41,630 bases of DNA from Perkinsus chesapeaki ATCC PRA-425 (Eukaryota > Protista > Perkinsozoa), in contig JAAPAO010000298.1 of NCBI GenBank assembly GCA_013115145.1, positions 1 to 41,630 of the forward strand, in the 5' to 3' direction. The notes under the pieces were generated by a model. That model did no database searches, had not been told where the DNA came from, and saw only the letters and a program-made list of their open reading frames with translations. Shown here piece by piece: positions 5,931 through 20,456 of the stretch (position 1 is the stretch's first letter; each line of letters begins with the position of its first letter). The position numbers and the translations under genes are program-made.

Positions 5931-6308
5931 CTAATCGATTTGGTTGACCATGCCTGTTGCTCTACCATCAGAAGCTTACCTCGATGATTATCAGGGAATG
6001 GTTATTAGAGTGAGCATCTGATAACAGCAATGGTTGGGGTATATATACAATATGACTATGTGGAAGTTTGGTATTAAATTTAGATGTTTGCATGATATCT
6101 TGTCCTATTGAGTTATCTCTATTGATCATCGTACTTGTTAACGCTACATTATCCCTACGGGTACCATCCTAATACCCATGCTGTGAGGAGCATATTATAT
6201 AATATCATCACTTAGCGAACATATCTATACAAAAGATACGCTAGTGTAGCTAACGCTATATTGTCATTATCATCAGTTTTATCAGCTCCCTATTTTCCCC
6301 CTATAACA

Positions 6309-7580
6309 ATGTCCTCAACTGAAGGAACCACTAAGGTTAAGCAGGGCCTTGCTCAAATGCTTAAAGGTGGTGTTATTATGGATGTTATGACCGTTGAACA
6401 AGCCAAGATCGCCGAGGCTGCTGGTATCACTATAACTTATTATAGTATTTAATATCATTTAGGTGCTGTTGCTGTGATGGCTCTTGAACGTATCCCAGCT
6501 GATATTAGAGCTGATGGTGGTGTTGCTAGAATGTCTGATCCTAAGATGATTAAGGAGATTATGGAAGCTGTTTCCATTCCTGTTATGGCTAAGTGCCGCA
6601 TTGGTCACTTTGTCGAGGCACAGGTAACATATTAATCTACCGTAGCTCCATATATTATATATTAGGTCCTTGAAGCTGTTGGTGTTGATTATATTGATGA
6701 GTCTGAGGTCCTCACTGTTGCTGATGAAGATAATCATATTAATAAGACTAAGTACCCTATAACCTCTCATTTGATATTATTACCCCACTACATCAGGTTC
6801 AAGGTGCCATTCGTGTGTGGATGCCGTAACCTTGGTGAAGCTCTTCGTCGTATTGCTGAGGGTGCTAGTATGATTCGTACCAAGGGTGAAGCTGGCACTG
6901 GTAAGGTTCATTAAAGTATATCATCCAATACATCCATTCACCATAGGTAACGTTGTTGAGGCTGTTCGCCACATGCGCACTGTTAACAGAGAGATCCGTA
7001 TCCTCCAAGCTTTAGAGGATGATGAGGTATTCACCTTTGCCAAACAGATTGGTGCTCCACTATCTCTTGTTGAGGAGACCAGACAGCTTGGTCGTTTGCC
7101 TGTCGTCAACTTTGCTGCTGGTAAGATATTATTATCAAGTTTATGTATGTTATACTTGTTCTTGATTAGGTGGTGTTGCCACCCCAGCTGATGCAGCTCT
7201 ATGCATGCAGATTGGTGTTGATGGTGTCTTTGTTGGCTCTGGTATCTTCAAGTCTGATAACCCAGAGAAGCGTGCCCATGCTATTGTCCAAGCTGTTACT
7301 CATTTCAAGGATCCTAAGGTATTACGTTGATACTGCCGCCCCCCCCCACATCACTGTACTTAGGTTATCGCTGAAGTATCTGAGGATCTTGGAAAGCCTA
7401 TGACTGGTATTAACTGTGACGAGTTGAAGGTCCGCTTCGCTGAGCGTGAGGCTGGTAACATGCCCACTACTTCCGGAGACAAGAAGGGTAATGAAATAAA
7501 GGGTAAGTAGTAGCTTAGATAAATAACAACATTATATACATGTTAAATATGTAGGTACATCCCTCGCTGAAGTTGAGTAA
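6309..7580 (+). CDS. PDX1: Pyridoxal 5'-phosphate synthase subunit Pdx1 (PdxS/Snz1); multi-exon
   Basis: [49 protein letters not shown] (catalytic Lys), [19 protein letters not shown] (second Lys), [31 protein letters not shown]. Strong codon bias. The unspliced stop is at 7510; the last exon 7555-7580 gives the spliced stop. Confidence 0.97.
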
Positions 7581-7815: not shown

Positions 7816-9171
7816 TCATTGTTGCTGACCGAGTGCTACGTTAAATAATAATGCTATGACACTTCCCCATAATATACCATGAACCAACGCGAAAGGCATA
7901 AAGTAACCCGCTACTTCTTGCTCGGTCTCATCTGATGATACTCTTTTTGGGCCATCTACCATAGACCATGTAACACCCATACCATTAGTTAAGGCTAATA
8001 ATGCCATTTGTACATGTTTAAACCAATTCCATTGAAAAGGTCTAATAGATGGATATAATGCAGTAGAAATGAATAATGGTATAAAACAAACTCTACAGCA
8101 TACGAATAGAAATAGATACCAACCCTTTAATGGTGGCAACAAACCAGGAGCAGCACGTCCTACTGTATCTAACACCTGAAAGGTGAACGTAACTTGAGCT
8201 ATAAAATCTATATTAGAGGGGTTCTCAGGGAGCCATAGAACACTTTGAGCAGGAAAAACTACGAAAGTGACAGCCATTGTGACCCATACGCAAACAGCAC
8301 TCGGAGCAACGTCACGGAGGATAGCAAGTACAGGCCGTCTAGTTTGACGGGTTGATAGACTTGAATGCATTCTATTATCCTCTATACTCAGAACTTGGAC
8401 CACATAGGGATGTTTGGATGTACCAAACGTATACATTGGGATCATTAATAATGCGAGACATGCACCAATAGAGAGAAGTATAAGGCATCTCCATTGAGGT
8501 ATCGGAGTTACACCAGATGATCTTAGGATCCAATTGAAAAGTACGTATAGGGGCCAAGGGAGTAACCCTGCTACACCCTCACCAATCATAATACTCACAG
8601 TACAGGATGAGGGGCATAATGCAGCAATACCGAGTGCAGTAGGCTCGAACACAGCATAACCAGTACCAAGTATGAACATACAAATGAGGGCTAATGAGAA
8701 TGATATCGTTGAGTTATCTATAGTTAGAGCAATAATAGCAGTTAACACAGTTCCTATCGCTAAGAGTACACAGCCTAGTAAGATTCTAGGCTTGAAAGGA
8801 AATCTATTTCCATACCATATAAGTAATATTTGTACTATATTAACAGCAATGGAGTAAAGGAAGGATAAGCATGCTGCGTAGTAATGTTGAAACCTACCGT
8901 TGAGGTAGTCCAGTTCTGTTAATATTAAATTATACGGCAGAAGAGCAATGAATCCAAAGCAGCTCATCTGGAAAAACAGTAGCCAGTTAACCCTCGCCGA
9001 GCTGGGGATTGGTGATCGGTCTTGCTCGGCCGATTTCGACGATTCTTCCGAACTGGTGAAGCCAGATGAGAATCCATCTGATGATACCACAGGAGTAACC
9101 AGCGTGTTATTCGGTCGCCCAATTATCGTGTTATCCGTTAATGGTTCTTCGGTAGCTGATCTACCCGTCAT
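7816..9171 (-). CDS. Equilibrative nucleoside transporter (ENT/SLC29) family, copy 1 (divergent, inverted); intronless
   Basis: Uninterrupted ORF with ~11 hydrophobic segments and GFIALLPYN, VFPA, FQVLDTVGR, LTNG and EQEVAGY. Met39 of the tracked ORF (9171) is preferred as start; an upstream ATG at 9285 is possible. Confidence 0.88.
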   Translation of the reverse strand: MTGRSATEEPLTDNTIIGRPNNTLVTPVVSSDGFSSGFTSSEESSKSAEQDRSPIPSSARVNWLLFFQMSCFGFIALLPYNLILTELDYLNGRFQHYYAACLSFLYSIAVNIVQILLIWYGNRFPFKPRILLGCVLLAIGTVLTAIIALTIDNSTISFSLALICMFILGTGYAVFEPTALGIAALCPSSCTVSIMIGEGVAGLLPWPLYVLFNWILRSSGVTPIPQWRCLILLSIGACLALLMIPMYTFGTSKHPYVVQVLSIEDNRMHSSLSTRQTRRPVLAILRDVAPSAVCVWVTMAVTFVVFPAQSVLWLPENPSNIDFIAQVTFTFQVLDTVGRAAPGLLPPLKGWYLFLFVCCRVCFIPLFISTALYPSIRPFQWNWFKHVQMALLALTNGMGVTWSMVDGPKRVSSDETEQEVAGYFMPFALVHGILWGSVIALLFNVALGQQQ

Positions 9172-9300
9172 ACAAGGCACAGGGACTTCAAGGCTTAGGC
9201 GCGAGGCTAGCCGCACGCATGCGCAGAGGGGCCGAGCTTTGCACGCGCGTACAAGCCCAGAGGCGCTCCAACTCTGAATGACCACTTGATGATGATGCTG

Positions 9301-9361
9301 CCTCCGTCTTCTCTTTCTTGCAGGTGTGACATAATTATGGTTTAGTTGATTACTGTTGTAG
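9301..9361 (+). promoter_or_regulatory. Polypyrimidine tract plus CAG followed directly by a 38-nt GT...AG element upstream of ENT copy 2 (trans-splice acceptor and/or 5'-UTR intron)
   Basis: CCTCCGTCTTCTCTTTCTTGCAG (9301-9323), then GTGTGA...TGTAG (9324-9361), 22 nt before the ATG at 9384. Confidence 0.35.
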
Positions 9362-9383
9362 TTGTTTCTTATCCTGTTCCTAC

Positions 9384-10622
9384 ATGGTTGCCGTGAAAGA
9401 TATCCCAGCCGAGGATACCAAACCCGGCCCTAAGGTCACCGCCTCGTTATTGGCCCAAATGGCTGTACTAGGATTTGTAGCCTTGGCCCCCTGGAACTTT
9501 GTCCTATCTGAGCTATCATACCTGGATGGGAAGTTTGAGAACCATTTCGGTGCTACTGTTCCTATATTCTATGGTGCGGCTGTTAACATCGCACAATTAC
9601 TTCTCATCTGGGTTGGTAACAAGTTCACCTTTGCACCCCGTTTCGACTGGGGATGCATAATCCTATCCATATTTAACATCCTACTGGCTATCGTCGCAAT
9701 GACCATTGGTAATGACAATGCGGTAGAGAACCCTAATCTTGGTTTTGGATTGGGTTTAGTATGCGTATTCTTGCTTGGTTTTGGTCATGCTGTTATGGAG
9801 TCTTCTGCATTTGGTCTCGCTGCCTTGTGCCCGAAGTCATGTATGATCTGGGTTATGGTAGGCGAAGGACTTGCTGGTCTAGTAGGATGGCCGTTGAGCA
9901 TGTTATTGAACTGGGCCCTTACTTCCGGTGGTGTTGACCGTGTTGAAGAGTGGAGATGTCTTATATTCTTCTGTGTCACTTCGGTTGTCACCATTGCCAT
10001 TGTCCCCATGTTCCGCATGCTTACTTCGAAGCACCCCTATATGGCCGAAGTCCTCAAAATCGAGCAAAATCGTGCCAAATCGAGCGTGATGACTCGGCAG
10101 ACACGTCGTCCGGTTTTGGCCATTATAAAGGATGTTAGCCCTATGGCATTCGGTGCCTGGTGCACTCTTGCTGTAACCTTTATTGTATTCCCTGCCCAGG
10201 TTGTGCTTTGGCAATCCTCAGACCCATCCAATACAGGTTTCGTATCTCAAGTTATATATACGTTCCAGGTAGTTGATACCATTGGACGTTTCGTTCCCAA
10301 TCTTGGATTCAACATGCGAGGTAGTTTCCTTATTGCCTTTACCTTAGCCCGTTCTCTCTTTATTCCTCTGTTTATCTGTACCAGTCTTTATGCAACTGTT
10401 GTTCCTTTCCAGTATGACTGGTTTAAGCATATGGAGATGGGAGTATTCGCCTTAACTAATGGTGTATCTGCTACCCTGTCAATGGTCTATGGCCCACAGC
10501 GTGTTCCTAATGATAAAGCAGAACAAGAGGTCGCTGGATACACCATGGGTTTCGCGCTCATCAACGGTATTTTCATCGGTAGTGTACTTGGTATCTGCAC
10601 TAACCTCGGCCTTGGCCAGTGA
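9384..10622 (+). CDS. ENT/SLC29 family transporter, copy 2; intronless CDS
   Basis: 412-aa ORF with GFVALAPWN, VFPA, FQVVDTIGR, LTNG and EQEVAGY. Confidence 0.93.
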   Translation: MVAVKDIPAEDTKPGPKVTASLLAQMAVLGFVALAPWNFVLSELSYLDGKFENHFGATVPIFYGAAVNIAQLLLIWVGNKFTFAPRFDWGCIILSIFNILLAIVAMTIGNDNAVENPNLGFGLGLVCVFLLGFGHAVMESSAFGLAALCPKSCMIWVMVGEGLAGLVGWPLSMLLNWALTSGGVDRVEEWRCLIFFCVTSVVTIAIVPMFRMLTSKHPYMAEVLKIEQNRAKSSVMTRQTRRPVLAIIKDVSPMAFGAWCTLAVTFIVFPAQVVLWQSSDPSNTGFVSQVIYTFQVVDTIGRFVPNLGFNMRGSFLIAFTLARSLFIPLFICTSLYATVVPFQYDWFKHMEMGVFALTNGVSATLSMVYGPQRVPNDKAEQEVAGYTMGFALINGIFIGSVLGICTNLGLGQ

Positions 10623-11326
10623 TATTATTATTATCCTTAGCCGCCTTGCAAAAGGTGTTACTGGTCCATTATTCAGTTACTACAGGAGTTAGTGCAACCA
10701 TTTGTTTTCAAATTGTATTATAGTGTACTGATGATGGTATACTCTATATCGTCTTATATCGATGTTCATTATTATGTTGTCTTGCCGCCCTTATAATGGC
10801 ATAGACTTCAACTTTCTATGATTAATTATTATTGAATAGCAACTCGAAGTACAAGAAGAAGAAGTCTCTGGATTCAGTCCATCAAACTGTTAATAGGAAT
10901 TTTCTATTAATAACGCAGATTAGAAGAAGAGTTGAACTATGTTTTAAAACAGTATGTTGTGTTCAGTGGGACAGCATGCACACAATGGCTACTATAGAAA
11001 GTACGAGAATAGAAAGTACATATAAGCATGCGATACAATAGCCCCAGCACATAACTGTCGGACTAAATAGTACAGTGGTTACCGGATAAAACCCCAGCAG
11101 CCGTTTGAGCTCATCACTGGTGGCAATGTGACAGTATGACAATGATATTAGGTTGCGCGTGCGTGCTGAATGAAGCTAGCTGAATGACAGCTAGAGACGG
11201 ACGCTAAGATATTTTATTACATGAATTAAAGGATTGATACTTAAGGATACACCACTCCGATTAGAGGAATAATCTTGTTACGATAGTCTTACTTAGTGTT
11301 TTTATCAACGACGTACCATTAATAAC

Positions 11327-12598
11327 ATGGCCATCGAATCACAAGTGTATCCAGAGTCTAAGGTTGGCGATATCGAGGAAGGTGAAGAGAAGCCTAAGGT
11401 CCAAGCCAAGGTCGATATATGGTTGCTTATCCAATTTGCAATTCTTGGATTTGTTGCCCTGGCTCCTTGGAACTTCGTCCTTGCTGATATTGATTATCTA
11501 GATCGGAAGTTTGGACATCACTTTGCATCAACAACGCCGATCTTCTATTCAGTTGCTGTCAATTGTGCACAGTTGCTCCTCATCTGGGTTGGTAACAAGT
11601 TCACATTTGCCCCTCGCTTTGATTGGGGTTGCATTATATTATCTGTCTTCAATATCCTATTGGCTGTTGTCGCTATGTTTATTGGTAATGATAACCCCGT
11701 CGATAACACAAGCCTTGGATATGGACTTGCCCTAGTTTGTGTATTCCTTCTTGGTTTTGGCCATGCTGTTATGGAATCTTCATCATTTGGTCTTGCAGCT
11801 TTATGCCCTCAGTCTTGCATGGTTGCTGTTATGACTGGTGAGGGTATTGCCGGTTTGGCTGGTTGGCCCTTAAATATGCTCTTACAGGTTATTCTGGAAG
11901 CTGCTAATGTTCCTCGTAGAGAAGAAGTGCAATGTATTATATTCTTCTGCTTTACTTCAGCCTTTACAATGTTCATTGTCCCTATGTTCCGTGTTTGGAC
12001 ATCTAAGCATCCTTTCATGGTTGAGATATTGAAGATTGAGGCTAAGAGATCCAAGGAGACTTTGACTGTTCGTCAGACAAGGCGTCCAGTGTGGAATATT
12101 GTTAAGGATGTTGCACCAATGGCTTTCTGTGCATGGTGCAGTCTTGGTGTAACATTCGTTGTCTTCCCCTCTCAAGTCGTTCATTGGCAATCCAGCAATT
12201 CAAACAATACCGGTTTTATCCCTCAAGTCATCTACACCTTCCAAGTGGTCGATACAGTTGGTAGATTCCTGCCTAGCTTCGGTATATCAATGCCTAATCT
12301 TCTATTAATATGCTTTGTTCTTGGAAGAAGTATCTTTATTCCACTTTTCATCTGCACCAGTCTCTTCCCTACCGCTGCACCATTCCGTTTTGATTGGTTC
12401 AAGCATTTAGATATGGCTCTTTTCGCAGTGACTAATGGTTTAAGTTGTACTATTGCCATGGTAAAGGGACCTACACGTGTCAGCCAAGATAAGGCTGAGC
12501 AAGAGGTTGCTGGTTACACTATGGCTTTCGCTTTGATCTTTGGTATCTTATGCGGTAGTGTATTTGGCCTATGCGCTAATCTTGGTTTGGGCCAATAA
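11327..12598 (+). CDS. ENT/SLC29 family transporter, copy 3; intronless CDS
   Basis: 423-aa ORF with GFVALAPWN, VFPS, FQVVDTVGR and VTNG. Shares LLLIWVGNKFTFAPRFDWGCIILS with copy 2. Confidence 0.93.
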   Translation: MAIESQVYPESKVGDIEEGEEKPKVQAKVDIWLLIQFAILGFVALAPWNFVLADIDYLDRKFGHHFASTTPIFYSVAVNCAQLLLIWVGNKFTFAPRFDWGCIILSVFNILLAVVAMFIGNDNPVDNTSLGYGLALVCVFLLGFGHAVMESSSFGLAALCPQSCMVAVMTGEGIAGLAGWPLNMLLQVILEAANVPRREEVQCIIFFCFTSAFTMFIVPMFRVWTSKHPFMVEILKIEAKRSKETLTVRQTRRPVWNIVKDVAPMAFCAWCSLGVTFVVFPSQVVHWQSSNSNNTGFIPQVIYTFQVVDTVGRFLPSFGISMPNLLLICFVLGRSIFIPLFICTSLFPTAAPFRFDWFKHLDMALFAVTNGLSCTIAMVKGPTRVSQDKAEQEVAGYTMAFALIFGILCGSVFGLCANLGLGQ

Positions 12599-13525
12599 TA
12601 ATTGTTATGATATTTTCATCTGTGTGTTATTGTCAAGTGTTTCTACTATATAAATAACGTCACTCATCAGTCCGTTATATTTATGAAATCACTGTTCCCC
12701 CCTCAGATGATGACAATCACTTTATGTTGCATTTCCGTGTGTTTCACGGTTTTGTTGAGGATGTGCCTCAAGACGTATTGCCTTTAAAGCATATCTCTCG
12801 ACTTCGTTGTACTGATTCAGTAGCACTTAGTTGTTCCCAGTAGTGTTATTGGTATGTTGTTATTACTCCTATTTTAAATGTGCTATAATGTTTAATCGTC
12901 ATTAACCGGGCTGAGTCCATGGTTATGTTCGTCTTATACTTTCTAATGATATTCCATAGTAGGAGTCAACTGCCGCCGACTTATGTACATCATCCTAAAG
13001 TTTAGGATCTATTCTACTAACAAATCATCTTTTACAATATGCGTGTTGTGTTGATTGTAGTGAATGGGACGTATTACGAATATGAGGTTCGCTATAGTAA
13101 GTAATTGTATAGATGTAGTGACTTCGCGTGTGCACTGGAACCTGTAGGCACTCAGGTTGTCCGACATTCGATAGCAGAACCGAAAACCACTCGAAGCGCC
13201 ATGTGATGCTCTCGAGTAGGTTGTAGTAGAAGTTCCACCGCTCAACAATATTGTTGTTCTCACATTTCATATCATGCCTGTCTCACACTCGTATCATTAT
13301 CTATGATATCTGCCTTATTAACCTTATACAATGCTGACTAGCGTAGACAGGCGATTTTGTTGCTAATCTCACAATTTATGTCTACTTGTATCTTAAGCTA
13401 AAGCGCTAGCTAGCGTGGTCACACAGTGCTTGCCCCCCGAGCCTGGCTTTATGCACTTATAGTGCTCATCACATATAAAATTATCCATTTGTTGTTGTAG
13501 TTTATATAACTTTGTATAACAGGCC

Positions 13526-14815
13526 ATGTCTTCTACACAAGGGTCACCCATCAGCAAAGCTGATTCTAGCCTCTCTGATATCGAAGAGGGGAAGTCTACT
13601 AAGGTTACCGAGTCTAAGCCCAAGGTCGACTTCTCGCTACTATGCCAGTTCTGTATTCTGGGATTTGTAGCTTTGGCTCCTTGGAACTTCGTCTTGGCAG
13701 ATTTACCTTATCTTGACTCCAAATTCCATAATCACTTCAGTTCAACGGTTCCTATTATTTATTCAGTTGCTGTGAATCTTGCACAGTTACTTTTAATTTG
13801 GGTCGGTAACAAGTTCAGTTTTGCTCCCCGTTTCGATTGGGGTTGCGGAGTATTAAGCGTATTCAACATCCTTCTTGCTGTTGTTGCTATGACTGTTGGT
13901 GATGGTAACCCGTGCCCTAATGAAGGACTAGGTTTTGGTCTTGCTCTAGTCTGCGTTTTCTTGCTTGGTTTTGGACATGCTCTTATGGAGTCTTCATCCT
14001 TTGGTTTAGCTGCCCTTTGCCCTCAATCATGTATGATCGCTGATATGACTGGTGAAGGTGTTGCTGGTCTAGCCGGTTGGCCTATTAATATGCTTCTACA
14101 AGTCATATTTGATGCTGGTAATGTCCGTCGCCAAGCAGAATGGCAATGTCTTGTATTCTTCTGTGTTACCTCTGTTATCACAGTATGTGTTATTCCTATG
14201 TATAGATGTGTAACATCTAAACATCCTTATATGAGACAGGTATTGAAGATTGAAGAGAACCGTAAGAAGACCAGCTTGAAGACACGTCAGACTAGACGTC
14301 CCGTTATATACATTCTAAAGGATGTCCTCCCTATGGCTTTGTGCGCTTGGGGCACTATGACGGTCACCTTCGTGGTATTCCCTGCCCAGGTGTCCTATTG
14401 GAAATCTGAAGACCCAACCAACACTGGTTTCGTATCACAGGTTATCTACACTTTCCAAGTTGTTGATACTATTGGCCGTTTCTTACCTAGTTTGAAATTC
14501 AACATGCCTAGTTGGTGCCTTATGATCTGGGTTGCTTGTCGTCTTATCTATATTCCGTTGTTTATGTGTATTAGTTTGTACCCCACCCTCATACCATTCT
14601 ATTATGATTGGTTTAAACATCTTGTTATGGGATGCTTTGCTATCACTAATGGTACTGGGTGCACTTTAGCTATGATGAAGGGACCAGAACGTGTTAAAGA
14701 GCAGTCCGAAGAAGAGGTCTCTGGTTATATTATGGCATTCGGCTTGATATCTGGTATTCTAACCGGTAGTATATTCGGCCTTATTGCCAATATCTGCCTT
14801 GGTCAGAGTACTTAA
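13526..14815 (+). CDS. ENT/SLC29 family transporter, copy 4; intronless CDS
   Basis: 429-aa ORF with GFVALAPWN, VFPA, FQVVDTIGR, ITNG and EEEVSGY. Confidence 0.93.
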   Translation: MSSTQGSPISKADSSLSDIEEGKSTKVTESKPKVDFSLLCQFCILGFVALAPWNFVLADLPYLDSKFHNHFSSTVPIIYSVAVNLAQLLLIWVGNKFSFAPRFDWGCGVLSVFNILLAVVAMTVGDGNPCPNEGLGFGLALVCVFLLGFGHALMESSSFGLAALCPQSCMIADMTGEGVAGLAGWPINMLLQVIFDAGNVRRQAEWQCLVFFCVTSVITVCVIPMYRCVTSKHPYMRQVLKIEENRKKTSLKTRQTRRPVIYILKDVLPMALCAWGTMTVTFVVFPAQVSYWKSEDPTNTGFVSQVIYTFQVVDTIGRFLPSLKFNMPSWCLMIWVACRLIYIPLFMCISLYPTLIPFYYDWFKHLVMGCFAITNGTGCTLAMMKGPERVKEQSEEEVSGYIMAFGLISGILTGSIFGLIANICLGQST

Positions 14816-15752: not shown

Positions 15753-18741
15753 TTATTTTAATGAGACATATCTGGGTCCATCACTAACTACACTTTCACG
15801 TTTAGCCTTGGACTCTTGTACGTTAGCTCGGACTCGCTCGAATGAGTCGGAGAATATCTGCCATACTATCCTAAATGCCTATCCCTACTGACACCCCCTA
15901 CCTGTTGAGTTATCGCACCAGGCATTAGAAGGCAGGGAGACGAAGTATCGTATACCCAGGAATCAGATGGGCCTGGATCTGCATCACCTGCATCGACTTC
16001 CTTATCTATATTTGAGATATATACTATAATTTCTTATACAAGTATATATACGAACCTGCTTCCTTTTTCTCACCAAGGTAGCCAGTAGCCTCCTCAAGTG
16101 CCGTGCATACTGTCTCATCGATTAACATCCTTATATCAGCACCAGACCATCCATGCTGATACATTCTACTACTATCATTCATATACCCCCACAATGCCTA
16201 CTGTTCGTCTAGCCCACATCCTCAGATTTACCGTATCTTTACAGAGATAACCAGCTTGTATAAGACTACTGCACATGGTAGTGAGTATGTCATATCTTTG
16301 GTCTTCATCTGGCATTGGTATTTTAACCTTATCATTATCACATTATAACACTGTCCGAGTAACATTCCTGCTGCTGCTGCCTACATGTAATCCGAATCTA
16401 CCATAACGTAGCAATGCGGGATCGATAACATCTGGACGATTGGTCGTGCCTAAGTGTATAGGACATGACTACTAGAGTAGTAGTAATAATTACCAATAAT
16501 AAGTATATTATTAAGGGGTTTAGTGTCAAGCACTCTCCTATTACCATTCACCATGGTGTTATCTAAGATCAAAATTGACAATAAGTAAGATGTGTTGGTC
16601 ACCGGACTACCGGAGACCCTAGATATCCTGCTCCCTCCAGGCGGGGAAGGAGGAGGAGGAGAAGAAGAAGGAGAATGCAGAAGACCATTGTTGTTGTTGT
16701 TACCCCCATGGCGGCCGCCTAAATGTTATTTGTCACCACGGTAGAGCACGGGTAGATAGAGATATTAGCACCCCTGTCAGTTCCCAGTACTACTTTTATC
16801 CTGCCCCCTGCCTTGCTTATTGTTATCAGGTAATGGTATAATACCTTATAATAGTCCATTACTCTACCTTATCTATTATTATGTATTCCTTACCATCCAT
16901 ACAGGCTAGTAAACATGATACTAATGAATCATCAGCCCTACTATTAGTATCACTCCCCCTTGTCTTAGTTAGTCCATCTATCTCATCTAATATTATCATA
17001 TGCAATGATAATGGATCATGTGATGTTTTTCTAGCAGGTTCGAATAGCTAAATACAGCAATGCCCCCCCTCCTTCCTGCCTCCTACTACTTACTTGAAAT
17101 AGTTTATGTTCACTTTCACCATACCATTTACTTTGTATATCAGGTGCATGAACTACTTGTACACTATCACAACACAAAGCCTGATAACGACAACAACAAA
17201 GCTCCCAGTGTAACCCACCACCACCATGACTACCTGCGAAAGGACCTTAGCTAATGATGTCTTACCGCAGCCTGGTGGCCCTGATAGCAATAGTCCCCTA
17301 TGATGCTGCATCCCTAGTGTCTGGAACAATACAGGTAATATAGTCCTACTAAAGGCCTTAATAACACTATCACCTTCAGCTCATCTGGGTGTAGTGTACG
17401 TGATAGCAGTAACCTTTGCAATAGTCTTATCTACAACATACCAATCCATAGTCCCTACTATACCGATACTATTCCTACTGTAGCCCTTGGTATACCGGAT
17501 ATACCTCCATCTCTAACAGCTTGCTCTAATGTACGTATCTCCCTCCTTCTCTCATGTATGGCATGAGCAACCCTAATACACCATCATCTTCACCAGTTAG
17601 CCATGACTATCACCTCGATGCCCGATGAGCCTCGTCCTCTACATCAGCAGCAGCAGCAGCAGTGGCCTGGTGTTGGTTATGATAGTAGTCCTGTCCGCCT
17701 GCCATCTCAGTAGCCCTACTCCTTCTATCCTCTATAGATGATGCTTGGTGGTGTTGTTGTGCCTTTGATGGTACTATAGATGCTTCTCTAATATATCTAA
17801 CCCATCACTATTATCATACCTATTATTATTACACCCTTACTCTCTCATACGTTTAGCAAAGGTACAAGCATGTGCCATATAAGGTATTGATATACCATCA
17901 CTGTTACTAGGCGGCGGTCCCCAGTCAGAAGAAGACCTGTATTATATTTAGATATGTCTTTAATGCCTGTGCAGCTCCCTACCCATCAGCCTCTTCTGGA
18001 GTTGGCACTGCTATTGATCTACCTGTAACGGCATGATGATGACTACCTATCTGTGTGTCTATATAATCTTCTATAAAGTTACGTATCTACCCATACCACA
18101 CTTCCGCTTGATCATCTTTAGACATACTACCCCTCTATTAACCCAATCCCTATCATGTCTTGTCAAGACTTGTAATAGGCGTATAGGTACATCTCTATCA
18201 CTCTGTATACTATACTTCAACGTTGAGCATAGGTCAGTAGCTAGTGTATCAAGGACCTTTCACAACAACAACCATGCCCATAGCCTATCCTTTTCCTTAC
18301 ATTTTGTGCTTTAGCAGCATCACAAGACTGCTGCTGCCTACCACCACTGGCTACTAACCTTTGCATTAGCTCCTCTCGTGTGCCATCTGTTGCCATGCCT
18401 TTCATAGCTAATATAGACTTTAGGTCATTCACCGATAATGGCTCTAACGCCAATCTCAGTGTCTAAATACACTAATGATAACAACAACAACAACTACTAC
18501 ACGCACCTACCTGCCCTTCATAAGGATGTGCAGTAGACTTAGTAGAGGCATCACCTTCATTACCACTAGCAGCAGCACTACTGCTACTATTGGCGGCATA
18601 TCGCCTCACTGTCCACAGTGCCGGCCGCCTGCTAGCCAATGTTATAGCTGAGGAGGGGTAAGGTAAGGTTTAGCAGCACTATGGCTTACTAGCCCTCCTG
18701 TGTATTGTGGTATACAAGGAGACTGCAGCAAGAGCAGACAT
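15753..18741 (-). CDS. AAA+ ATPase: mitochondrial-type presequence, SAP domain and a single NSF/Sec18-D1-like AAA module; multi-exon
   Basis: Presequence MSALAAVSLYTTIHRRA|TITLASRRPALWTVRRYAANSSS, with a 42-nt intron at 18648-18689. SAP-like LSVNDLKSILAMKGMATDGTREELMQRL (18355-18438). Walker A GPPGCGKT (17258-17281), pore loop SKWYGESE, Walker B LHMIILDEID (~16976-17005), SRH NNILIIG|TTNRPDVIDPALLRYGRF, lid GWSGADIRMLIDE and ITQQ|IFSDSFERVR. Stop at 15753-15755. Confidence 0.82.
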
Positions 18742-18899
18742 TTAACAGCCATAGACACTAAGATGATGACAGGGGAGAGGGGTATAACACGACAAGTTAT
18801 GAAGAAAGAACGGTATGAATAATAATAACGTGACAACATGCAATGGGTAGTAGTAGTAACATGCTAGTTATGCCGATAATGCCTTTTATTTAATACTCT

Positions 18900-20456
18900 A
18901 CCACACCTTCTCCTTATCCTACCCCATAACGATGCCCCTCTAACAATGCACTACTATTCTATATCCTTCTATCCTCCTTACCTTGTATACTTCCTTGCTG
19001 TATTACAGCACTGTCCTCCTCCTCCTAATAGGCTGACTTCCACCTCCTCAAGCCTCTCTTCACCATATGATCTCCGTTCCTCTAAGGTATCAGTAGAGTT
19101 ATATTATCACTCATCACCTCACCAAGTAATGCCCTACTAGGCCCATCTGACACTAGGAGCCTATCCTCTTCACAATTGCCTTTTGTCATCTTATGCCCAG
19201 TAATGAATCTATTTCCCTTTAACACTAGTAAAACTCAATAACAATAGGTATTACCCCAGTAGCTTGCCTTAACATGCTGCTGCTCTACGGCCAGGTGGTG
19301 ATCGACATTATACGAGAGGACGGCAATAGTGTAATCAATCAATACTTGACATAGCAATCTTATGGTAGTAGTAGCTTCAACGGGACAGTGATATAATAGA
19401 GATGGTGAGCGACACACTCATCATTTTATAGAAGGTGTTAACAACTTGTCTGCAGTAGCTTAATACACGGAAGAAGCACTAGCATGCATATAGAGATAAT
19501 AATAGTAGTAGTAAGCACTTCTACACCAGAGAAGGACAGCAACAGCACCAATAGGGAGTGATAATGGAAGTAATGGAATCATAATTTCATGGTATTATAC
19601 GAACGGAGGGAAGCATCATTAGCAGGCTTCATACGGCGGCTCAACAAACGGCCAAACTCAGTTGTCAAGCATCGACGTTTGAGGGTTCTCAGAAGAGATT
19701 GGCGTCTAAAGGGAATGCTGTTAAAGGCTATTGTTGAAAGCATGACCTACTTCTCCTGAATAAGGCCAGCACAGCCCTCTTCATCATCACTATCTAGATT
19801 GAAGTAATAATCGCTACTGTTAGTAGCAGTACGGCTGCATGCTGAATGGGAAATATGGTATTAATAATGATGATACACTAACTACCCGTAGCTGGCGTAA
19901 GATCAGCGGACTTAAGGGATTCAGTATCGCTCTTCAGAGGGGTATCATCGGGATCCACAAAGAGCTCGACATACAAGTCGTGGGGCATGTCCCTGATAAT
20001 AAGTACCACTATATGATTAGATGACACTACCTCTTAAGTGTAGCATTGGTAAGCCAGGACGGCTTGTCAATATCATTTAATGAAGTAACTTCAGCTACCA
20101 CAGTACGATCTCTCATCCATACTAATGTGGCTTTACGATTATCATTACGTATGTAGTTGGAGGCCAATATCTGATAGACTACTAATAAAGAGGAGCTATA
20201 TAGCAGCAGGTTACAAAGCATCCACGTCTAATGCATCTATCAGCAGATAGATCGGAGTTAGCCCGGTCAGCAGGTAGGTTGATAATAGGATCTTCGGTAA
20301 CTATTAGGACCTGTTACAAAATATGAAACGGCTGGGAAGATTCATAATGAGGTCGCTTGGAAGCCTTACCTGATTCTTCGCGATAGTGCACTCAGCGAAC
20401 TTGAGCCCAAACCTAGCATCACGGGTCTCCTTGCAGATTGTAACGTGCCAGACCAT
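18900..20456 (-). CDS. Hypothetical protein; multi-exon; N-terminus weakly PDZ-like; 3' end unresolved
   Basis: In-frame GT-AG-joined exons MVWHVTICKETRDARFGLKFAECTIAKNQ|VLIVTEDPIINLPADRAN...IRRGCF|ILASNYIRND...LKR|DMPHDLYVELFVDP. Later exons could not be joined unambiguously. Confidence 0.5.

What the first reader, a model, noticed from the sequence alone, without database searches (positions are those of the whole stretch)
15753..18741. Mitochondrial-presequence + SAP domain + single NSF-like AAA+ ATPase: an architecture I do not recognise
Seen: a spliced N-terminus with no acidic residues for over 40 aa, Arg/Ser/Thr/Ala-rich and ending RRY|AANS. It is followed by a SAP-like motif and then one complete AAA module. 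The module has intact Walker A, Walker B Glu, both SRH arginines and the lid helices, and a stop follows about 20 aa after the lid. Established: LHMIILDEID, NNILIIG-TNRPD and the 'LLSRTLHPDELKTLGMQHHRG' lead-in parallel NSF/Sec18 D1. NSF itself is cytosolic, has an N domain and D2, and has no SAP. SAP motifs bind nucleic acids and occur in mitochondrial DNA-acting proteins such as S. pombe Ydc2. R-X-Y|A fits the R-3 MPP/Icp55 pattern. Inference: an NSF-derived motor re-targeted to the mitochondrial matrix to remodel nucleoid or RNP complexes, in a lineage with highly unusual mitochondrial genomes and fragmented rRNAs.
Basis: partly seen in the sequence, partly recalled or inferred. Interest (0 to 1): 0.82.

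Follow-up and report, generated by a model that had tools for sequence, protein, structure and literature searches.

The report
SAP-tagged NSF-like ATPase of Perkinsus
A many-exon gene of the oyster-parasite relative Perkinsus chesapeaki joins a nucleic-acid-binding SAP motif to a single motor domain derived from the membrane-fusion ATPase NSF, behind an organelle-style leader; the architecture is real, found only in Perkinsus and undescribed, but its location and job are untested.

Summary
The window is Perkinsus chesapeaki contig JAAPAO010000298.1. The stretch 15753-18741 (-) is the annotated gene for KAF4664056.1 (652 aa, 19 GT-AG exons), auto-named "vesicle-fusing ATPase".

Confirmed here:
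- A 47-residue acid-free, Arg/Ser/Thr/Ala-rich leader.
- A SAP motif, at or above Pfam's cut-off in three Perkinsus species.
- One complete classical AAA module, with no NSF N domain and no D2.

A careful tree (100/99 support), shared indels, per-domain BLAST and Foldseek all place the module with NSF/Sec18 D1, on a long branch.

Orthologues were found only in P. olseni and P. marinus, at a syntenic locus. The region between SAP and AAA has no detectable relative elsewhere.

Two P. olseni gene models carry a longer, acidic N-terminus. Three-species comparison argues these are fusions with a separate 100-aa upstream gene. A conserved ATG exon and phase-1 intron give acid-free leaders of 47, 63 and 53 residues.

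Mitochondrial targeting and nucleoid or RNP remodelling remain inference. No transcript, proteomic or localisation evidence could be obtained.

Verdict: a real, lineage-restricted new variant of a known motor family, of moderate interest. The scan noted this stretch once before; that note is the same finding.

The parts
15753..18741 (-). Whole gene: 19 annotated exons (probably 20) encoding P0022 / KAF4664056.1
   Evidence: Exact spliced mapping of P0022 to the window, all introns GT-AG. Annotation on contig JAAPAO010000298.1.
18559..18741 (-). Leader, residues 1-47 (exon 1, a 42-nt phase-1 intron, start of exon 2): acid-free, rich in Arg/Ser/Thr/Ala
   Evidence: Composition. The equivalent ATG exon and phase-1 intron are found in P. 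olseni (L002, ATG at 10638) and P. marinus (L003, ATG at 6618), giving acid-free leaders of 63 and 53 residues.
18352..18438 (-). SAP motif, residues 72-100 (LSVNDLKSILAMKGMATDGTREELMQRLV)
   Evidence: PF02037 at 28.5, 28.2, 24.6 and 24.8 bits against a cut-off of 23.9. AF2 helix-loop-helix, pLDDT 78-94.
17688..18339 (-). Middle region, residues 105-262: predicted helical, conserved within Perkinsus, no known domain
   Evidence: No Pfam hit. No homologue outside Perkinsus. AF2 pLDDT below 50-60.
17386..17645 (-). Long helix (residues 263-300) followed by the NSF-type pre-Walker-A linker GISGIP...LLLSRTLHP
   Evidence: AF2 helix H263-300, pLDDT 70-93. Aligns with the NSF/Sec18 'GIGGLD..IFRRAFASR..P' segment.
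16316..17293 (-). AAA core, residues 347-512. Walker A 17281-17258, pore loop 17129-17109, Walker B 16996-16976, sensor-1 16497-16436 (spans an intron), Arg fingers 16417-16394
   Evidence: PF00004 at 99 bits. Motif positions.
16611..16718 (-). Probable unannotated in-frame exon (36 residues, SGRHGGNNNNNGLLHSPSSSPPPPSPPGGSRISRVS) inside the only long intron. It lies in a low-complexity insertion between helix alpha-3 and strand beta-4.
   Evidence: It splits the 231-nt intron into 75 + 48 nt, keeps phase 1, and resembles the P. olseni insert exon RHHHNGGTVGPRPPSTPPAPAKV.
15798..16152 (-). Lid subdomain: GWSGADIRML helix, a roughly 39-residue acidic insertion, and the last helix ITQQIFSDSFERVRANVQESKAKR. 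A short tail then runs to the stop at 15753.
   Evidence: PF17862 at 25 bits, below the 27.2 cut-off. The last helix aligns with the last lid helix of Cdc48 D2. AF2 helices H555-574 and H617-640.
18870..18935 (-). Neighbouring conserved ORF end 'ASLWGRIRRRCGRV..' with a stop at about 18864. It is probably the C-terminus of a separate small gene, not part of this gene.
   Evidence: tblastn. A stop follows the motif in all three species. It is a separate 100-aa gene in P. olseni, FOZ60_017515.

Best explanation
This is a Perkinsus-restricted paralogue built from the D1 motor of NSF/Sec18. It has lost, or never had, the SNAP/SNARE-binding N domain and the D2 oligomerisation ring. In their place it carries an N-terminal SAP motif and a helical region of about 200 residues of unknown fold.

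Shown: the architecture; intact ATP-binding, hydrolysis, arginine-finger and aromatic pore-loop motifs; conservation and synteny in three species.

Inferred: it assembles, probably in a nucleotide- or substrate-dependent way, into a single hexameric ring. That ring would thread or pull apart protein substrates while the SAP motif tethers it to DNA or RNA.

Inferred with less confidence: the 47-63-residue acid-free, Arg-rich leader directs it to an organelle, most likely the mitochondrial matrix. There it would remodel nucleoid or ribonucleoprotein complexes.
For: Gene model: exact 19-exon mapping. Every exon is recovered in frame in the P. olseni and P. marinus loci, with conserved gene order of CAP, a ~590-aa gene, a ~207-aa gene, this gene, then nucleoside transporters.

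SAP: at or above the Pfam cut-off on the exon in three species, and confidently modelled as helix-loop-helix.

AAA: 99 bits with all catalytic motifs.

NSF-D1 origin:
- The best per-domain BLAST hits are NSF-D1-type, 150-179 bits and about 35% identity, reaching into the pre-Walker-A linker. CDC48 domains score 125-141 bits.
- Shared signatures and indels: 'SR..P' linker, 'LH.II.DE', 'LNNIL.IG.TNR', and a 4-residue insertion after 'IHT'.
- In the careful ML tree, Perkinsus plus NSF-D1-type rows have 100/99 support.
- The constrained clade has a higher likelihood than the free quick tree, p-AU 0.94.
- Foldseek's top PDB hits are NSF/Sec18 D1 at 33-34% identity, against 25% for p97.

Leader: acid-free for 47, 63 and 53 residues in three species, although its sequence is poorly conserved. 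It starts at a conserved ATG exon followed by a conserved phase-1 intron.
Against: No expression evidence. No RNA run holds the stretch, and the two small same-species runs laid nothing on the gene.

No localisation evidence. The P. marinus orthologue C5L6G5 is absent from the stored part of the P. marinus mitochondrial complexome tables, but that file is truncated.

Two P. olseni models (P0002, P0020) start further upstream with acidic residues.

The R-3 motif is not conserved, and the helical moment of the leader is modest.

SAP proteins are mostly nuclear (general knowledge).

NSF D1 alone does not hexamerise stably without D2 (established knowledge of NSF), so ring assembly here is assumed.

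The long stem (1.57 substitutions per site) makes the exact position relative to NSF D1 unsure.
Confidence: 0.45

Rival explanations
1. Same protein, but nuclear. It would be a SAP-tethered single-ring AAA unfoldase acting on chromatin or nuclear RNPs, functionally like a minimal NVL/Rix7, Yta7 or p97-on-chromatin. The basic N-terminal stretch would be a disordered nucleic-acid-binding tail, not a targeting peptide.
For: SAP motifs are typical of nuclear proteins (general knowledge). The leader's cleavage motif is not conserved and its amphipathicity is modest. Atlas feature hits for residues 60-330 are N-terminal domains of other AAA proteins, including a nucleolin-binding one, but at scores of 0.58-0.72.
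Against: An acid-free stretch of 47-63 residues at the very N-terminus is kept in three species while the sequence drifts. An acidic patch follows immediately, which is the usual pattern for cleaved targeting peptides. No NLS or nuclear evidence was obtained.
Confidence: 0.3
2. The annotated start is wrong. The gene would continue upstream and include the exons encoding 'M..ES.DERTAFM..GSSSTVASS..SLWGR.RRRC..', as in P. olseni models P0002 and P0020. The true N-terminus would then be acidic and no presequence would exist.
For: Two of the P. olseni models join these exons to the AAA gene. The homologous exon lies only about 125 nt upstream of the ATG in the window.
Against: The upstream ORF ends in a stop 10-15 codons after the conserved motif in all three species, with unrelated tails.

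The P. olseni fusion needs a 331-nt intron, whereas introns here are 41-57 nt.

Inside that 'intron', P. olseni and P. marinus have an ATG exon homologous to exon 1, with the same phase-1 intron.

A third P. olseni assembly annotates the upstream exons as a separate 100-aa protein. The P. chesapeaki annotation gives them to yet another gene.

A stop codon directly precedes the ATG in the window.
Confidence: 0.15
3. It is simply the organism's NSF (vesicle-fusing ATPase), as the database names say.
For: Automatic names 'transport between ER and Golgi ATPase protein' and 'Vesicle-fusing ATPase'. D1-type similarity.
Against: There are no CDC48_N or CDC48_2-type N-domain hits and no second AAA domain. 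The protein has a SAP motif and a leader instead. It sits on a long branch outside all sampled NSF D1 sequences.
Confidence: 0.02

Closest known systems
NSF / Sec18, D1 domain
   Same: The AAA module groups with NSF-D1-type domains at 100/99 support. It shares the pre-Walker-A 'SR..P' linker, 'LH.II.DE', 'LNNIL.IG.TNR.D.ID.ALLR.GRF' and length features. The best structural matches are NSF/Sec18 D1 at 33-34% identity. It has an aromatic pore loop and both arginine fingers.
   Different: No N domain and no D2 ring. It adds a SAP motif, a helical region of about 200 residues, a low-complexity insertion between alpha-3 and beta-4, and an acidic insertion in the lid. It sits on a long branch and has an N-terminal leader.
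Cdc48/p97, VAT, Afg2/Drg1, NVL/Rix7 (tandem classical AAA unfoldases)
   Same: These give the highest whole-protein scores in PDB and database searches, because both of their domains match. The fold and motifs are the same.
   Different: Per domain they score lower than NSF D1 and fall on the other side of a 100/99 split. They have two rings and N domains.
Single-ring classical AAA proteins with a small N-terminal targeting module (Vps4-MIT, katanin, spastin, Msp1/ATAD1)
   Same: The same logic applies: one AAA ring plus a short N-terminal recognition module. These typically assemble on substrate or nucleotide (general knowledge).
   Different: They belong to a different AAA subfamily; Vps4-like rows sit far from the Perkinsus clade. 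Their N-terminal module is MIT or a transmembrane segment, not SAP.
Uncharacterised SAP+AAA cluster in the ESM Atlas (about 420 aa, 63 members, labelled mostly Thermoplasmatota)
   Same: It has the same two Pfam families and is the top feature-based hit, at 0.94.
   Different: It is much shorter, from a different domain of life by its label, and its AAA subtype is unknown. No alignment could be made, so kinship is untested.
Organellar SAP proteins (S. pombe Ydc2/Cce1 resolvase; plant plastid nucleoid pTAC3)
   Same: These are precedents for SAP motifs acting on organelle DNA (recalled knowledge, not tested here).
   Different: They have no AAA module and are unrelated outside the SAP motif.

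Membership tests
Classical AAA clade (Pfam PF00004) | Walker A, Walker B, sensor-1 Asn, second region of homology with two Arg, pore-loop aromatic | tested here: met
   PF00004 at 99 bits. GPPGCGKT, IILDEID, TTN, ALLRYGRF and KWYGESE are all present and conserved in P. olseni and P. marinus.
NSF / Sec18 | D1 domain of NSF type | tested here: met
   100/99 clade with NSF-D1-type rows. Shared indels and signatures. Foldseek's top hits are NSF/Sec18 D1.
NSF / Sec18 | N-terminal SNAP/SNARE-binding N domain (CDC48_N / CDC48_2-like) | tested here: not met
   No such Pfam hit in P0022, P0002 or P0020. Residues 105-335 have no Pfam hit. tblastn with NSF matches only the D1 region of the window.
NSF / Sec18 | Second AAA domain (D2) that holds the hexamer | tested here: not met
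   A single PF00004 stretch. One Walker A in the protein. No D2 match in the window. The stop at 15753 is conserved in three species.
SAP domain (PF02037) | HMM score at or above the gathering cut-off, and a helix-extended loop-helix fold | tested here: met
   28.5, 28.2, 24.6 and 24.8 bits on the exon in three species, against 23.9. In full-length context the scores are 23.4, 18.9 and 20.0. AF2 helices 74-83 and 92-104, pLDDT 78-94.
SAP domain (PF02037) | Binds DNA or RNA | not testable with these tools
   Needs EMSA or an equivalent assay.
Mitochondrial matrix presequence | N-terminal 20-60 residues without acidic residues, rich in Arg/Ser/Thr/Ala | tested here: met
   47, 63 and 53 acid-free residues with 5-6 Arg in three species.
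Mitochondrial matrix presequence | Amphipathic helix and a conserved MPP R-2/R-3 site | tested here: inconclusive
   The maximum 18-residue helical moment is 0.8-1.2 on the Kyte-Doolittle scale. RRY|A occurs only in P. chesapeaki; the others have GRRA(S/A)SSSS. No TargetP or MitoFates was available.
Mitochondrial matrix presequence | Import into and processing in mitochondria | not testable with these tools
   The stored part of the P. marinus complexome tables does not list C5L6G5, but the file is truncated.

The most novel reading that the evidence does not exclude
A genus- or perkinsid-specific mitochondrial matrix motor: an NSF-D1-derived single-ring unfoldase recruited to mitochondrial DNA or RNA by a SAP motif. 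It would serve the unusual Perkinsus mitochondrial gene-expression system (fragmented rRNAs, frameshifted genes). This would be the first NSF-lineage AAA protein working inside an organelle on nucleoprotein substrates.
Probability: 0.25. Interest if true: 0.75.

Novelty: new variant of a known kind. Interest (0 to 1): 0.45.

Why it matters
NSF is usually regarded as a conserved enzyme dedicated to SNARE disassembly. A lineage that has detached its D1 motor and re-equipped it with a nucleic-acid-binding module and an organelle-style leader shows how AAA motors are re-purposed.

If the mitochondrial reading is right, it gives a concrete, taggable candidate for the poorly known machinery that handles the aberrant mitochondrial genomes of perkinsids.

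It also corrects misleading database names: 'vesicle-fusing ATPase' and '26S proteasome regulatory subunit'. And it exposes conflicting gene models at this locus in three Perkinsus genomes.

Tried and rejected
- RNA evidence: the look-up of sequencing runs listed only two tiny same-species runs with a 0.00 share. Read laying put nothing on the gene. Loci of P. olseni and P. marinus cannot be given to the reads tools.
- Proteomics: the P. marinus mitochondrial complexome paper (PMC13623125) has no stored supplement. The preprint's table is truncated and lacks C5L6G5.
- Homologues of the SAP-to-AAA region (residues 60-335): only Perkinsus.
- Exhaustive HMMER with the Walker-B exon: beyond Perkinsus, only generic NSF-like hits at 50 bits or less.
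- AF2 of the N-terminal half alone gave pLDDT 44, which is unusable, so no fold search was run on it.
- The quick tree left the Perkinsus clade in a polytomy with zero-support placement. This was replaced by the careful tree.
- Literature searches for SAP+AAA or an NSF paralogue returned nothing relevant.
- The canonical NSF reading was rejected on domain content.
- A plastid bipartite leader was considered and set aside, because P. olseni and P. marinus have no signal-peptide-like hydrophobic core (inference).
- Peroxisomal PTS1 was rejected: the conserved C-terminus is VSLK, not SKL-like.
That it does is assumed from general knowledge.
Full report
**Identity of the sequence**

A protein search starting from one exon led to a 652-aa database protein whose only contig is 41,630 bases long, the length of the window. 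It is KAF4664056.1 of Perkinsus chesapeaki, on contig JAAPAO010000298.1 of assembly GCA_013115145.1. Its automatic names are 'transport between ER and Golgi ATPase protein' and 'Vesicle-fusing ATPase'.

The protein maps exactly onto window 18741..15753 (minus strand) as 19 exons with GT-AG introns. Seventeen introns are 41-57 nt and one is 231 nt.

**Check of the observation**

- Leader: residues 1-47 contain no Asp, Glu or Lys. They hold 6 Arg, 8 Ser, 5 Thr and 11 Ala, in a protein that is 12.4% acidic overall.
- SAP motif (residues 72-100): Pfam PF02037 scores 28.5 bits on the exon alone, against a gathering score of 23.9. In the full-length protein it scores 23.4. The same exon scores 24.6 in P. 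olseni and 24.8 in P. marinus. AlphaFold2 models it as two helices joined by a loop, with pLDDT 78-94.
- AAA module: PF00004 scores 99 bits. It has Walker A GPPGCGKT, pore loop KWYGESE, Walker B IILDEID, sensor-1 TTN and the two arginines of ALLRYGRF.
- Single module: there is one Walker A in the protein and no CDC48_N-type or second AAA hit. tblastn with NSF, Sec18 and CDC48 against the whole window matches only this D1-like region.
- Room for more exons: the next gene downstream is an intron-less nucleoside transporter on the other strand, about 940 nt away. There is no room for a D2 exon set.

- The lid carries an acidic insertion of about 39 residues before its last helix (ITQQIFSDSFERVRANVQESKAKR). 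That helix aligns with the last lid helix of Cdc48 D2.
- The single long intron very probably hides an in-frame 108-nt exon (16718-16611). It would split the intron into 75 + 48 nt, and it resembles the corresponding P. olseni exon.

**One gene or two?**

Loci from P. olseni (L002) and P. marinus (L003) were fetched. Gene order is conserved: CAP, a ~590-aa gene, a ~207-aa gene, this gene, then nucleoside transporters.

tblastn recovers every exon from SAP to the stop codon, in order and in frame, in both species. The P. marinus database entry is a 227-aa fragment named '26S proteasome regulatory subunit', but its locus encodes the whole protein including SAP. SAP and AAA therefore belong to one conserved gene. 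No transcript evidence could be obtained.

**The N-terminus**

This is the weak point. Two P. olseni models (P0002, P0020) start further upstream and include acidic residues. Their extra exons end in a conserved 'SLWGR.RRRC.(K/R)V' motif. That motif also exists in the window, at 18935-18870, just upstream of the annotated ATG.

In P. chesapeaki those exons are annotated as the tail of the upstream 295-aa gene. In a third P. olseni assembly they form a separate 100-aa protein, FOZ60_017515.

Four observations favour a separate small gene:
1. In all three species the ORF stops 10-15 codons after the motif, with unrelated tails.
2. The P. olseni fusion needs a 331-nt intron, in a gene whose introns are 41-57 nt.
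3. Inside that 'intron', P. olseni and P. marinus each have an ATG exon (MLLHSLHHRCCLGTTTAAYVTQF / MLHSLPRHYLGTTLAACAAHQF). It is followed by a short phase-1 intron (43 / 53 nt) and an exon homologous to exon 2 of the window, exactly as in P. chesapeaki (42 nt).
4. A stop codon directly precedes the ATG in the window.

The three reconstructed leaders are acid-free for 47, 63 and 53 residues, with 5-6 Arg each, and each is followed by an acidic patch. The presequence-like character is thus conserved while the sequence drifts, as expected of a targeting peptide.

Against that, the R-X-Y|A motif occurs only in P. chesapeaki. The helical moment is modest, and no predictor or experiment was available.

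**What kind of AAA module?**

Whole-protein searches are topped by Cdc48/p97, but only because both of their domains match. Several lines place the module with NSF D1:
- Per domain, NSF-D1-type domains score best. They reach 150-179 bits at about 35% identity, starting in the pre-Walker-A linker. CDC48 domains reach 125-141 bits.
- The alignment shows NSF-specific features: 'GI(G/S)G..', the '..SR..P' linker, 'LH.II.DE', 'LNNIL.IG.TNR', and a 4-residue insertion after the 'IHT' position.
- A quick tree left the position unresolved. Constraining Perkinsus with NSF D1 gave a higher likelihood.
- A careful IQ-TREE run (56 rows; NSF-D2-like and very long-branch rows left out) groups the Perkinsus clade with all NSF-D1-type rows at 100/99. 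That group stands against CDC48 D1 and D2, Afg2/Drg1, FtsH and Vps4-like domains. Perkinsus is sister to the rest on a long stem of 1.57.
- Foldseek on the AF2 model ranks NSF/Sec18 D1 chains first at 33-34% identity, against 25% for p97.

Caveats:
- The AF2 alignment was rich in NSF-like rows.
- PEX1/6, Rpt, katanin and Msp1 were not in the tree.
- Many NSF-like rows had been picked by similarity to one exon.

**Distribution**

A search scored on residues 60-335 alone returned only Perkinsus proteins. The exhaustive HMMER search with the Walker-B exon found nothing closer than generic NSF-like proteins outside Perkinsus.

The middle region has no Pfam hit and is modelled with low confidence as helices. 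A long helix (residues 263-300, pLDDT 70-93) precedes the AAA core.

The ESM Atlas lists an uncharacterised ~420-aa SAP+AAA cluster, labelled mostly Thermoplasmatota, as the best feature match. The domain pairing is therefore not unique, though kinship is untested. Literature searches found no description of such a protein.

**Mechanism**

- Shown: a complete, conserved ATPase with an aromatic pore loop, joined to a SAP motif.
- Inferred: a single-ring unfoldase or remodeller tethered to nucleic acid. NSF's hexamer is held by D2 (established knowledge), so this protein must assemble differently, perhaps on substrate or through its N-terminal helices.
- Location: I put mitochondrial matrix at about 45%, nucleus at about 30%, and a wrong N-terminus at about 15%.
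- The specific nucleoid/RNP role is a hypothesis only.

**Verdict**

This is a real, lineage-restricted new variant of the NSF branch of AAA ATPases, mis-named in the databases. It is of moderate interest, which would rise if organellar localisation is shown.

Noticed in passing
window 16611-16718 (-): Probable unannotated in-frame exon (36 residues, Asn/Pro/Ser-rich) inside the only long intron of the gene. With it, all introns would be 75 nt or shorter and the protein about 688 aa.
   Followed up: yes
window ~18864-19200 (-); L002 9952-10457; L003 ~5966-6420: A small conserved ORF set ('..DERTAFM..GSSSTVASS..SLWGR.RRRC..' then a stop) is annotated three ways. It is the tail of a 295-aa gene in P. 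chesapeaki, the N-terminus of the AAA gene in two P. olseni models, and a separate 100-aa protein in P. olseni FOZ60_017515. It has no Pfam hit.
   Followed up: partly
L003 6618-9565 (P. marinus GG679769.1): The P. marinus database protein XP_002775810.1 (227 aa, '26S proteasome regulatory subunit, putative') is a truncated model. The locus encodes the full SAP+AAA orthologue.
   Followed up: yes
window 7816-14815: Array of four intron-less nucleoside-transporter (PF01733-type) paralogues. Three are tandem on the + strand (9384-10622, 11327-12598, 13526-14815) and one is a 489-aa ORF on the - strand (7816-9285). Neighbouring genes have an intron every ~100 nt. The array is conserved in P. olseni and P. 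marinus.
   Followed up: no
P0087 (MMETSP transcript, 904 aa) and Atlas diatom clusters: An NSF-like family in diatoms and other algae has a hydrophobic N-terminal leader, an intact D1-type domain and a C-terminal region without a Walker A. It may be another re-targeted NSF paralogue.
   Followed up: no
P0005 (1504 aa, source unknown): Large protein with two tandem NSF-D1-type AAA modules after a long repetitive N-terminal region. It groups inside the NSF-D1-type clade.
   Followed up: no
ESM Atlas cluster (rank 1): Cluster of about 420-aa proteins carrying both AAA and SAP Pfam families. It has 63 members, labelled mostly Thermoplasmatota, and is uncharacterised.
   Followed up: no
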